Part shown: positions 43,717 through 46,529 of the stretch, in pieces
How the letters are laid out: the number at the start of each line of letters is the position of its first letter
How positions within the stretch are numbered: the first letter of the stretch is position 1
Translations under genes and position numbers: made by a program
Notes under the pieces: generated by a model
The model's database searches: none
What the model saw: only the letters and a program-made list of their open reading frames with translations
Told to the model about the DNA's origin: nothing
Virus record (IMG/VR): IMGVR_UViG_3300046660_000716
Coordinates: 124,001-188,000 of that record
DNA length: 64,000 bases
Direction: 5' to 3' (one strand)

Positions 43717-43983
43717 ATGACAAAAACGAAGCCAACGACGTTTGTGAACGACCTCGGACCCGTAACGTGTAGCTGCTGTACAGAGCCCCGGCCGAGGGCG
43801 AAAAGCATCAAGATCAACATCGACCGCCTGCACTACAAATGGCTGTGCTCGCGCTGCTTCGCAACACAACTAAGAACACAGAAGGAATCCAATGACGCAA
43901 CAAGAGACGCCACGCCGTCCGGGCCGTCGTCCGATCCTAACGCCCGAGATCGTCGAGTCGTGCAAGGCGCGGCTTGCCGCTGA
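43717..43983 (+). CDS. Small Zn-finger-like protein
   Basis: CSCC...WLCSRC; AT-richer codons; overlaps the next ORF. Confidence 0.4.
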   Translation: MTKTKPTTFVNDLGPVTCSCCTEPRPRAKSIKINIDRLHYKWLCSRCFATQLRTQKESNDATRDATPSGPSSDPNARDRRVVQGAACR

Positions 43984-44812
43984 GAGCGCGAACGACACGA
44001 TAGCCTCGCTGGCGCGGGAGTACAACGTTCACTCCACCACGATGCGCATGGCCGTGCGCGGGACAACGTGGGCCAACCGTGACCCCGCCTCCGTGCCCGA
44101 GCCCGAGGGCATGCGACGCATCCCTGGCTACTCTGCCTACTTCGCTGACCGGCGCGGCGACATCTACTCCGCCCGCCAGAGCGACTCGCTGAAGCCGCTG
44201 GCGTTCGGTGCCTCCGGCAAGGGTAGGAAGGTCTTCCTGATCGCGGACGGGGCCGAGAAGGGTCACACCGCGCAGGTCCACGATCTCATCTGCGCCGCGT
44301 GGCACGGCCCGCGTCCGACGGACCGCCACCGCGTCCGCCACATCGACGAGGACCGCACCCACAACTCGCCGGACAATCTGGCCTGGGGCGAGCCCGGCGA
44401 GGTTCCCCGCTCCGGCGGCGGGGCCACAGGGGAGGCGCACGGCCGCTCCAAGCTGACCGACGCTGACGTGCTGCAGGTGCTGGCCTACGCGGCGGCCGGC
44501 GAGCGCCCCGCCGACATCGCGCGGCACAAGCACGTCCACCCGACGACGATCTCGGGCATCGTGGCCCGCCGTCTATGGAGCCACGTCCAGATCCCGGACG
44601 GCGGCCTGCCGGCCGTCGCCCCGCTCCCGCACGCCGACCGGCGCGTGTCCTCCGGTCAGAACCACGGCCGCGCCAAGCTCAATGACGCCGCCGTCGGCCG
44701 TATCCGCCTCAGCCTGCCCCACAAGAGCAACGCGGAGCTCGCCAAGGAGGAGAAGGTCCACCCGACCACCATCGCAAGGATCCGCTCGGGCCGCGGCTGG
44801 AGGGCGCCGTGA
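43892..44812 (+). CDS. HNH homing endonuclease with HTH repeats
   Basis: IPGYSAY..DRRGDIYS, VHDLICAAWHGPRP, VRHIDEDRTHNSPDNLAW and repeated G..H.R.KL...V / VHPTTI..I HTH units. Confidence 0.8.
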   Translation: MTQQETPRRPGRRPILTPEIVESCKARLAAESANDTIASLAREYNVHSTTMRMAVRGTTWANRDPASVPEPEGMRRIPGYSAYFADRRGDIYSARQSDSLKPLAFGASGKGRKVFLIADGAEKGHTAQVHDLICAAWHGPRPTDRHRVRHIDEDRTHNSPDNLAWGEPGEVPRSGGGATGEAHGRSKLTDADVLQVLAYAAAGERPADIARHKHVHPTTISGIVARRLWSHVQIPDGGLPAVAPLPHADRRVSSGQNHGRAKLNDAAVGRIRLSLPHKSNAELAKEEKVHPTTIARIRSGRGWRAP

Positions 44813-46290
44813 GCGCCGTTGCGGCGGCGGACTTCGTCGGAACCGAGTTCGCCGGGGAGGTGGACGACAAGGGATATTTCCGGCGGGACTTCTCGCCCGA
44901 GCTGGAGGGTAGCCGGGAGCAGTGGACGGAGTACTGCGACGTGCAAGAAAGCTTCAGGACCCTGGGATACGAGCTCCGGGAACACTACTCAGAACACGAC
45001 TGCCTCACCGGCACCGTCGTCAAACTTAAGGCAGATATGACCATCGACCCATCCTCCATCAACCTGGAAGCCCTGCGCCAGGACGCTTGCAACTCGGCCC
45101 TGCGCAAGATCAACGCCAGCGAGACCCTGACCACCGCACTGATCGCCCGCGCCTGCTACGACGCGAACGGCGAGTACTGCAAGCTGGCCGGCGACGCCGA
45201 CCCGCTGCCGTGGGACCAGTGCTCCGCCTCGACCGAGGAGGGCGTGCTGTTCCGCATCAAGAATCCGGACGCTCCGAACAGCGCCCTGCACGAGAACTGG
45301 CTGAAGTCTAAGGCTGCGGACGGCTGGAAGTGGGGCGAGGTCAAGAACGTCGAGACCAAGGAGCACCCGGCGTTCCTGCCGTACGATAAGCTGCCCGAGA
45401 CCCAGCGCCTCAAGGACGAGCTGTTCACCCGCGTGGTGATGTTCCTGGTGCGCTATTTGGACCCGGCCCAGCTGGCCAACATCCGCTCGACTGGCACCGC
45501 GCCGGTCAGCGAGATCGCCTACGAGGGCGACGGCTTTGACGGGGACCCCGCCCTCGCTTTTAGCCAGGCCGACGCGATCGTAGCATCGGTCGTCGCCGGC
45601 CTGCCCAGCCACCGCGTGCTGACCGTCGGCGATCTCCCGAAGGCGTTCTACGATGCATGCAGCCTCTTCTACACCTCGCTGGGCGACACCGCGCAACTGG
45701 CCTACGTCGGCGGCGTGGTCGACAACTGCACCGCGCGCGTCATGTACGCGCTGGGCGGCGACTACGAGTCGGCCCAGGCCCAGCACGAGGACGTCGTCTC
45801 CATGATGCTGGAGGAGGGCTGGCGCTTCAGCACCGAGCGCGGCATCGACGCGGTCGCCATGGTCAGCCCGTACCTGTGCCCATGGGGCGACCTGCCGCTG
45901 CGCCGCAAGGTCGAGGAGACGATCCTGTTCGACGTCATCAAGGCCCTGAAGCCGGTGCTGGTGGGCCAGAAGGCGCCGGAGCCCGCCTCGATCGCGGGCC
46001 TGACCAACCTGTACAAGGGCGGGCAGGGCGACGCCCGCCAGTCGGACTCGCCCGTGCTCGATCCCGAGTGCAGCCTGTTCCGCAAGCGCTACCGCAAGCT
46101 GAGCGAGCCCGAGGTCGCGCTGCACGACGCGATCAAGGACAAGGCCGACGAGCTGTACCGCCTGTTCATGCAGGTCTCGCCGATCGACAAGGGCCAGGAC
46201 GCCAACCGCGAGCGCGGCGCCAACGTCCAGCTGGGCGTGCGCCACCTGGAGGACGCCGTGTACCGCGTGGTCAAGGGCCTGACGTCGTGA
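44809..46290 (+). CDS. RyR-domain protein fused to an Acb2-like C-terminal domain
   Basis: HENWLKSKAADGWKWGEVKNVETKEHPAFLPYDKLPETQRLKD (RyR), a second degenerate RyR repeat, and C-terminal YRKLSEPEVAL...LEDAVYRVVKGLT. Confidence 0.7.
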   Translation: MSAVAAADFVGTEFAGEVDDKGYFRRDFSPELEGSREQWTEYCDVQESFRTLGYELREHYSEHDCLTGTVVKLKADMTIDPSSINLEALRQDACNSALRKINASETLTTALIARACYDANGEYCKLAGDADPLPWDQCSASTEEGVLFRIKNPDAPNSALHENWLKSKAADGWKWGEVKNVETKEHPAFLPYDKLPETQRLKDELFTRVVMFLVRYLDPAQLANIRSTGTAPVSEIAYEGDGFDGDPALAFSQADAIVASVVAGLPSHRVLTVGDLPKAFYDACSLFYTSLGDTAQLAYVGGVVDNCTARVMYALGGDYESAQAQHEDVVSMMLEEGWRFSTERGIDAVAMVSPYLCPWGDLPLRRKVEETILFDVIKALKPVLVGQKAPEPASIAGLTNLYKGGQGDARQSDSPVLDPECSLFRKRYRKLSEPEVALHDAIKDKADELYRLFMQVSPIDKGQDANRERGANVQLGVRHLEDAVYRVVKGLTS

Positions 46291-46529
46291 TCTCCGACTA
46301 CGTCCAGGCGCAGGCGCTGCTCTACCTCCAGTGGCTGGTCGAGCAGGCGAAGTACGACTGGGGCGTCCTGTCCCAGCCGTGGCTGTGGTACTGGGCGCTG
46401 GTTCCGGCCTTCTTCTACGCCGTCTTCGCCGTGTGCAAGTGGGTGATCATGCTGCTGCCAGTGTGGTTGCCCCTGCGGTTTGCACTGATGGCCGTCGCCG
46501 TCCTCATCCGCGCCTTCCGGGGCCGGTGA
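46287..46529 (+). CDS. Small membrane protein
   Basis: GTGA overlap; highly hydrophobic and Trp-rich. Confidence 0.6.
   Translation: MISDYVQAQALLYLQWLVEQAKYDWGVLSQPWLWYWALVPAFFYAVFAVCKWVIMLLPVWLPLRFALMAVAVLIRAFRGR

What the first reader, a model, noticed from the sequence alone, without database searches (positions are those of the whole stretch)
44809..46290. RyR-RyR-Acb2-like fusion: candidate multi-ligand immune-signal sponge
Seen: the 493-aa protein has a clear RyR repeat (HENW...DGWKWG...KEHP.FLPYDKLP...LKD), a second degenerate one (HEDVVSMMLEEGWRF...SPYLCPWGDLP) and a ~75-aa C-terminal helical hairpin, YRKLSEPEVALHDAIKDKADEL...VQLGVRHLEDAVYRVVKGLT. Known: phage Acb2 sponges, which bind CBASS cyclic oligonucleotides, show the pattern YRDLSxEEI...xIKE...RWLAIGKTxxQxGxMxxxRAI. 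Inference: an anti-CBASS/Thoeris-type sponge fused to RyR domains, which may bind further nucleotide signals. RyR domains would then be an uncharacterised anti-defence module.
Basis: partly seen in the sequence, partly recalled or inferred. Interest (0 to 1): 0.75.

Follow-up and report, generated by a model that had tools for sequence, protein, structure and literature searches.

The report
Phage RyR–Acb2 fused immune-signal sponge
A 259-kb soil jumbo phage encodes one 493-residue protein that joins two already-known kinds of anti-defence "sponge" (a RyR-domain binder of Thoeris signals and an Acb2-type binder of CBASS signals) around a decayed second RyR repeat, so it is a new combination of known parts rather than a new kind of thing.

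Summary
ORF 44809-46290 (+, 493 aa) has an intact RyR repeat (Pfam PF02026, 42 bits), a degenerate second RyR repeat, and a C-terminal Acb2/Tad1 hairpin (PF24729, 32 bits, above cut-off).

RyR1 (aa ~77-230) is 38% identical (E=5e-29) to RyR Tad gp68 of Pectobacterium phage CB1. That protein is an experimentally proven gcADPR sponge, and RyR1 keeps all six of its ligand-binding residues. It also keeps the four RyDEP active-site residues.

RyR2 (aa 231-398) has lost five of the six binding residues.

The last 95 residues are a complete Acb2-type unit. Its relatives are mostly stand-alone 90-110 aa proteins. The profile's best PDB hit and the nine best Foldseek hits are all Acb2 or T4 Vs.4. The cyclic-dinucleotide residues Y11, L14 and K26 are kept (Y428, L431, K443). 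The cA3 residues R67 and T74 are not.

The closest tested relative, Acb2_13, blocks CBASS and type I Thoeris.

Fused sponges are also known. I found no report of the RyR–Acb2 combination or of a tandem RyR. No binding was tested here.

The parts
44809..46290 (+). Whole CDS, 493 aa, GTG start: N-extension, RyR1, degenerate RyR2, Acb2-type unit
44809..45036 (+). N-terminal extension, aa 1-76. Function unknown. From aa 51 it is weakly similar to the N-domain of RyR Tad gp68. Absent from the orthologue P0004. The model is low-confidence here.
45037..45498 (+). RyR1, aa 77-230: intact RyR Tad / RyDEP-type module, model pLDDT 83-97
45289..45417 (+). RyR1 ligand-site core: H161, W164, K179, H186, K202, D203. 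These equal gp68 H129, W132, K147, H154, K170, D171. H161, W164, H186 and D203 equal RyDEP H75, W78, H100, D117.
45499..46002 (+). RyR2, aa 231-398: degenerate RyR repeat. H326 is kept. The other site positions read W to V329, K to R, H to S353, K to E and D to E. It has no DNA counterpart in the related phage locus L005.
46003..46287 (+). Acb2-type unit, aa 399-493: conserved N-motif (D408, R410) plus a helical hairpin (helices 433-456 and 467-492). Y428, L431 and K443 equal Acb2 Y11, L14 and K26.
43892..44812 (+). Upstream HNH endonuclease with HTH domains. Its stop overlaps the start of the fusion gene. The same pairing occurs in the related 253-kb phage.
46287..46529 (+). Downstream 80-aa two-TM protein. 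Its GTG start overlaps the fusion gene's stop. It is homologous to the 68-aa protein of L005.

Best explanation
The gene encodes a composite anti-defence protein that removes the small-molecule alarm signals of two bacterial immune systems.

RyR1 is a RyR Tad / RyDEP-type module. It most likely sequesters the Thoeris signals 3'cADPR and 2'cADPR in a pocket lined by H161, W164, K179, H186, K202 and D203.

The C-terminal 95 residues are an Acb2-type unit. It most likely oligomerises as Acb2 does (a hexamer) and holds CBASS cyclic dinucleotides between pairs of protomers through Y428, L431 and K443. It may also hold 3'cADPR, because its closest tested relative blocks both systems.

RyR2 has lost the ligand residues. 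It most likely serves as a structural partner for RyR1, standing in for the second subunit of the RyR Tad dimer in the way the two repeats of the animal Repeat12 domain pair up.

What is shown: domain identities, residue conservation, recurrence of the fusion and synteny.

What is inferred: ligand binding, oligomeric state, the role of RyR2 and in vivo activity.
For: RyR1:
- Pfam RyR above cut-off.
- BLASTP to RyR Tad gp68: E=5e-29, 38% identity over 169 aa, with all six binding residues aligned identically.
- gp68 binds 1''-3' gcADPR with a KD of 43 nM and rescues phage from type I Thoeris. The same protein family is homologue H7, a nanomolar sponge, in PMC13232231.
- RyDEP H75, W78, H100 and D117 have identical spacing here.

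Acb2 unit:
- PF24729 above cut-off.
- 113 relatives in an exhaustive search, mostly stand-alone proteins of 90-110 aa.
- The family profile's best PDB hit is Acb2 of PaMx33, E=0.0067, with Y11 and K26 aligned to the invariant Y and K. Those residues are essential for cGAMP binding.
- The nine best Foldseek PDB hits are all Acb2 or T4 Vs.4.
- The subfamily member Acb2_13 was validated against two CBASS systems and type I Thoeris.

Fusion:
- It recurs in P0004, P0006, P0007, P0017 and P0034.
- It arose independently on another Acb2 subfamily in L012.
- Fused sponges that block two systems have been demonstrated: Acb4-Sequestin and Tad2-Acb4.

Genome:
- No Tad2 or other Acb2/Tad1-hairpin or RyR gene was found elsewhere in the 259-kb genome.
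Against: - No binding, cleavage or phage-rescue data exist for this protein.
- The complex prediction was not folded, so hexamer formation and ligand placement are untested.
- The profile-to-PDB E-value is only 0.0067.
- The Acb2 cA3 residues R67 and T74 are A471 and R478 here.
- Acb2 homologues differ widely in ligand specificity, so CBASS specificity is not assured.
- The RyR2 model is weak (pLDDT 31-73). Its packing against RyR1 is unresolved (rmsd about 20 A to Repeat12).
- The gene lies among RNA polymerase and virion genes, not in a recognised anti-defence island.
Confidence: 0.7

Rival explanations
1. RyR1 is an enzyme, not a sponge. [quoted passage not shown]
For: The catalytic dyad and its neighbours (RyDEP H75, W78, H100, D117) are all present with identical spacing: H161, W164, H186, D203. 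The protein hits the RyDEP structure 35TM directly at E=1.6e-7.
Against: Only DyoEdafos RyDEP cleaved the signals among the nine proteins tested. The other homologues keep the same residues, and six of those eight bind without cleaving. RyR1 is far closer to the sponge-type gp68/H7 (E=5e-29). The genome has no NARP1-type enzymes (no NAPRTase or Pribosyltran_N), which is the context in which RyDEP acts.
Confidence: 0.15
2. The protein is devoted to Thoeris only. The Acb2-type unit either binds 3'cADPR like Acb2_43, or acts mainly as an oligomerisation scaffold that multimerises RyR1. There would be no anti-CBASS role.
For: [quoted passage not shown] This subfamily has an extra, nearly invariant N-terminal motif with D408 and R410. 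Acb2_13 inhibits type I Thoeris.
Against: Y428, L431 and K443, the cyclic-dinucleotide pocket residues, are nearly invariant across the subfamily. Acb2_13 also inhibits both CBASS systems tested. A pure scaffold would not need these residues.
Confidence: 0.2
3. It is not an anti-defence protein. It would be a nucleotide-sensing regulator or a virion or assembly component that happens to use RyR and hairpin folds.
For: The gene sits between an RNA polymerase beta-prime fragment with an HNH gene and a head-tail joining gene. Timing of expression is unknown. Helical hairpins are a common fold.
Against: Both modules belong by sequence to families whose tested phage members are signal sponges or signal-degrading enzymes. 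The ligand residues are conserved in both. The same two families have fused independently at least twice.
Confidence: 0.07

Closest known systems
RyR Tad (gp68 of Pectobacterium phage vB_PatP_CB1; same Pectobacterium phage protein family as homologue H7 of the RyDEP study) and RyDEP (Mycobacterium phage DyoEdafos gp78, PDB 35TM)
   Same: RyR/Repeat12-type all-helical domain. 38% identity to gp68 over 169 aa. All six gcADPR-binding residues and all four RyDEP active-site residues are kept with identical spacing. A weakly similar N-terminal segment precedes the RyR domain, as in gp68.
   Different: Those proteins have a single RyR domain and form homodimers. This one continues into a second, degenerate RyR repeat and an Acb2-type unit. 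Activity (sponge or glycosidase) is untested. There is no NARP1 neighbourhood.
Acb2 (PaMx33 gp26, PDB 8H2J/8H2X; T4 Vs.4, PDB 7UQ2; Acb2_13 of Hadary et al. 2025)
   Same: Pfam PF24729. Two-helix hairpin. Y11, L14 and K26 equivalents are conserved. Stand-alone relatives are 90-110 aa. The subfamily member Acb2_13 blocks CBASS and type I Thoeris.
   Different: Here the unit is the C-terminal module of a 493-aa protein. The subfamily has an extra conserved N-terminal motif (NVYxGxxDxRQ). The cA3-site residues R67 and T74 are not conserved. Only about 20% identical to PaMx33 Acb2.
Natural fused sponges: Acb4-Sequestin (Pseudomonas phage Ab09 gp59), Tad2-Acb4 (Pasteurella phage Pm86), Sequestin-Tad2
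   Same: One polypeptide joins modules from two independent sponge families, and such proteins are shown to counter both Thoeris and CBASS.
   Different: The module pair is different (RyR with Acb2). This pairing is not reported in the papers I could search. A third, degenerate module lies between the two.
Animal ryanodine receptor Repeat12 domain (for example human RyR3, PDB 9L90, 6UHE)
   Same: Two RyR repeats in tandem in one chain. Foldseek aligns 260-280 columns colinearly with RyR3 Repeat12.
   Different: The second repeat lacks the ligand residues. Relative packing in the model differs (rmsd about 20 A) and is low-confidence. There is no channel context.

Membership tests
RyR-domain anti-Thoeris proteins (RyDEP / RyR Tad, Pfam PF02026) | Pfam RyR domain above the gathering score | tested here: met
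   42.2 bits against a cut-off of 27.4, aa 160-203. It is the only RyR hit in the genome.
RyR-domain anti-Thoeris proteins (RyDEP / RyR Tad, Pfam PF02026) | Significant full-domain similarity to an experimentally characterised member | tested here: met
   BLASTP to gp68: E=5e-29, 38% identity over 169 aa. phmmer to 35TM: E=1.6e-7.
RyR-domain anti-Thoeris proteins (RyDEP / RyR Tad, Pfam PF02026) | Ligand-binding residues (gp68 H129, W132, K147, H154, K170, D171; RyDEP H75, W78, H100, D117) | tested here: met
   RyR1 has H161, W164, K179, H186, K202 and D203. RyR2 keeps only H326.
RyR-domain anti-Thoeris proteins (RyDEP / RyR Tad, Pfam PF02026) | Binds or cleaves 2'cADPR/3'cADPR and rescues phage from Thoeris | not testable with these tools
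   Needs biochemistry and plaque assays.
Acb2 sponge family | Pfam Acb2_Tad1_hairpin above the gathering score | tested here: met
   32 bits in the whole protein and 35.9 bits on the module alone, against a cut-off of 27. All 31 aligned relatives hit it.
Acb2 sponge family | Two long antiparallel helices matching solved Acb2 | tested here: inconclusive
Acb2 sponge family | Cyclic-dinucleotide pocket residues Y11 and K26 (plus L14) | tested here: met
   Y428, K443 and L431 by the profile alignment to 8H2J. They are invariant or nearly invariant in the subfamily. Their essential role is from PMC10312549.
Acb2 sponge family | Cyclic-trinucleotide pocket residues R67 and T74 | tested here: not met
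   They align to A471 and R478. These residues also vary among true Acb2 homologues, so this limits the predicted ligand range rather than membership.
Acb2 sponge family | Homohexamer with three dinucleotide pockets | not tested
Tad1 | Hairpin followed by the Tad1 C-terminal gcADPR-binding domain | tested here: not met
   The protein ends one residue after the hairpin (aa 493). Nothing follows it. The stand-alone relatives are Acb2-sized.
Fused multi-sponge anti-defence proteins | Modules of two independently acting sponge families in one ORF, recurring in phages | tested here: met
   RyR plus Acb2 hairpin in this protein, P0004, P0006, P0007, P0017, P0034 and L012. One contig covers the whole gene without differences.
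Ryanodine-receptor Repeat12-type tandem | Two RyR repeats packed as a pseudo-twofold unit | tested here: inconclusive
   The tandem repeats are confirmed. The colinear Foldseek alignment to RyR3 Repeat12 has an rmsd of about 20 A, and RyR2 has pLDDT 31-73.

The most novel reading that the evidence does not exclude
The tandem RyR1-RyR2 folds into an intramolecular Repeat12-like pseudo-dimer, a viral counterpart of the animal ryanodine-receptor R12 arrangement. The Acb2 unit assembles six such units into one large particle with about six gcADPR sites and three cyclic-dinucleotide sites. The remodelled RyR2 pocket has acquired a different ligand, for example His-ADPR, N7-cADPR or a cyclic mononucleotide. 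One protein would then neutralise three or more signalling systems.
Probability: 0.12. Interest if true: 0.65.

Novelty: new variant of a known kind. Interest (0 to 1): 0.42.

Why it matters
It would add RyR–Acb2 to the short list of natural fused sponges. Because the fusion has arisen independently at least twice, it suggests that phages benefit from countering Thoeris and CBASS signals with one gene.

The tandem intact and decayed RyR pair is a possible phage analogue of the animal Repeat12 tandem. It could help explain how a homodimeric nucleotide-binding module becomes a single-chain pseudo-dimer.

The many unannotated domains fused to this Acb2 subfamily are candidates for new sponge families by the same guilt-by-fusion logic that found Sequestin.

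Tried and rejected
1. Complex prediction with four copies of the Acb2 unit plus 3'3'-cGAMP was counted but not folded, because the tool gives no verdict for ligand complexes. It is not evidence either way.
2. phmmer of the last 81 aa alone against the PDB found nothing. Only the family profile reached Acb2.
3. The word-based homologue search with the N-terminal 240 aa found nothing, so aa 1-76 have no alignment depth and the model there is unreliable.
5. L032 and L034 looked like RyR–Acb2 fusions from the tblastn range. They are a 116-aa RyR gene followed by an unrelated 99-aa gene with no Pfam hit.
6. P0062 (1442 aa) is a Tube-repeat protein, so that hit is spurious.
7. P0002 looked like an RpoB–RyR–Acb2 fusion. 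It is best read as an assembly chimera.
8. Tad1 membership was rejected because there is no Tad1 C-terminal domain.
9. NARP1 and Tad2 were sought in the genome and not found.

Full report
**What is there**

The window is bases 124001-188000 of a complete 259,338-bp virus record with direct terminal repeats. GC is about 65%. It comes from a rhizosphere metagenome. It is a jumbo phage with a split multisubunit RNA polymerase, only about 31-35% identical to those of AR9/PBS1-like and other jumbo phages.

Its start overlaps the stop of an upstream HNH endonuclease gene (GTGA). Its stop overlaps the GTG start of an 80-aa two-TM protein. A GGAGG motif and codon-position GC (GC3 0.80 for aa 1-76, and 0.93-0.99 for the rest) support the long reading frame.

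One 55.7-kb contig in run X1 covers the locus with no differences, but it may be the source sample. A second study (X2) holds two identical 151-nt contigs over 44786-45091.

**Module 1: RyR1 (aa ~77-230)**

Pfam RyR scores 42 bits against a cut-off of 27.4. The protein hits ryanodine-receptor structures and PDB 35TM directly. 35TM is the RyDEP-3'cADPR structure.

Two 2026 preprints define the function of phage RyR domains:
[quoted passage not shown] Six of eight other homologues bind these signals without cleaving them.
- 10.64898/2026.06.04.730250 shows that gp68 of Pectobacterium phage CB1 (RyR Tad) is a dimeric gcADPR sponge with a KD of 43 nM. It uses H129/W132, K147/H154 and K170/D171.

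gp68 was the best phage hit of this protein. BLASTP gives E=5e-29 and 38% identity over 169 aa. All six residues align to H161, W164, K179, H186, K202 and D203. The AlphaFold model is confident here, with pLDDT 83-97.

Because RyR1 is much closer to the sponge-type gp68/H7 than to RyDEP, and the genome lacks NARP1-type enzymes, a sponge is more likely than an enzyme.

**Module 2: RyR2 (aa 231-398)**

Pfam misses it, but three results show it is a real repeat:
- It matches RyR1 at E=7e-7 over 143 aa.
- It hits RyR-containing PHROGs on its own.
- It aligns to the RyR domains of P0004 and P0006.

Only the first histidine of the site survives (H326). The other five positions read V, R, S, E and E. 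The model is weak here, with pLDDT 31-73.

Foldseek aligns the two repeats colinearly with human RyR3 Repeat12, but with an rmsd of about 20 A. So pseudo-dimer packing is an inference, not a result.

**Module 3: the Acb2-type unit (aa 399-493)**

An exhaustive phmmer search with aa 230-493 found 113 representatives. Most are stand-alone proteins of 90-110 aa that match aa 399-493. The family alignment shows an N-terminal motif (NVYxGxxDxRQ) followed by LFRxRYRxL...HDxIK and RHLEDAVYRAVKxLT. All 31 aligned members hit PF24729.

The profile's best PDB hit is Acb2 of PaMx33 (8H2J, 8H2X, 8IXZ; E=0.0067). The alignment runs along the whole hairpin and places Y11, L14 and K26 on Y428, L431 and K443. 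Y11 and K26 are essential for cyclic-dinucleotide binding, and R67 and T74 for cA3. The latter two align to A471 and R478.

Acb2_13 of Hadary et al. belongs to this subfamily. By my reading of Table S2 it was validated against type I Thoeris and two CBASS systems, but not against type II or IV Thoeris or Pycsar. Acb2 homologues can switch to 3'cADPR using extra N-terminal elements. Ligand specificity therefore remains open.

**Recurrence and evolution**

RyR plus Acb2 hairpin recurs in P0004, P0006, P0007, P0017 and P0034.

P0004 lies at the syntenic locus of a related 253-kb phage. The order there is RNAP beta-prime piece, HNH, fusion, CHAP, small TM protein, and further on the head-tail joining gene. 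At the DNA level the RyR1 core is 72% and the hairpin 82% identical to that locus, and RyR2 has no counterpart. So RyR2 and the N-extension are extras of this lineage.

In IMG/VR nearly all of 126 relatives carry RyR alone. L012 joins RyR to a different Acb2 subfamily, with both Pfam hits above cut-off. The fusion therefore arose at least twice.

**Comparison with what is known**

Fused sponges are established: Tad2-Acb4, Sequestin-Tad2/Acb4 and Acb4-Sequestin, which binds gcADPR and cGAMP. None of the papers I could search mentions a RyR-Acb2 fusion.

The finding is therefore a new combination and arrangement of known modules.

**Limits**

No ligand binding, oligomeric state or in vivo activity could be tested. 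The complex job was not folded.

Noticed in passing
L003:1-1113 (protein P0002): A 363-aa called gene joins an RpoB-like N-terminus (Pfam RNA_pol_Rpb2_1 and RNA_pol_Rpb2_2) in frame to the RyR-Acb2 gene. The first 615 nt of the contig do not match the related phage. From nt 616 it is 99.8% identical to L005. This is most likely an assembly chimera at a contig end, not a real fusion.
   Followed up: partly
window 43892-44812 and L005:7075-8004: An HNH endonuclease with HTH domains sits between the RNA polymerase beta-prime fragment and the fusion gene, with overlapping stop and start. The pairing is conserved (71% DNA identity) in a related 253-kb phage. The nuclease and the anti-defence gene may travel together as a cassette.
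   Followed up: partly
window 46287-46529; L005:9190-9396: An 80-aa protein with two predicted TM helices is translationally coupled to the end of the fusion gene. It has a 68-aa homologue in the related phage, where a CHAP-domain gene lies between them. No family hit; function unknown.
   Followed up: partly
L012:153-746: A 198-aa viral protein with RyR (37.9 bits) fused to a different Acb2 subfamily (39.9 bits; FNPG...IK...HLETAQMYAVKA type). This is evidence for an independent RyR-Acb2 fusion event.
   Followed up: partly
P0034 (231 aa): A RyR-Acb2 fusion in which both presumed ligand sites are altered: the second RyR histidine is D, and the Acb2 Y and K positions are F and N. It is either decaying or has a changed specificity.
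   Followed up: no
proteins P0008-P0012, P0026, P0030-P0036, P0040-P0059: Many relatives of this Acb2 subfamily carry extra N- or C-terminal regions of 70-250 aa with no Pfam hit, and one has a glutaredoxin domain (P0010). By the guilt-by-fusion logic these are candidate new sponge or anti-defence modules.
   Followed up: partly
window 46003-46041 (aa 399-411) and alignment A2: The subfamily has a conserved N-terminal motif, N-[VL]-[YF]-x-G-x-x-D-x-R-Q, with D408 and R410 nearly invariant. PaMx33 Acb2 lacks it. It is kept in every fusion and predicted as coil in the monomer model. Its role is unexplained; it may be an extra pocket element like the beta1 strand of Acb2_43.
   Followed up: no
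whole genome G000: No NAPRTase, Pribosyltran_N (NARP1-type) or Tad2-like gene is found in the 259-kb genome, and there are no tRNA genes in the window. This gene is the only RyR hit and the only Acb2/Tad1-hairpin hit in the phage.
   Followed up: yes
window 44786-45091: A second rhizosphere study (run X2) holds two 151-nt contigs identical to this stretch at low depth, so the same or a near-identical phage occurs in another sample.
   Followed up: partly
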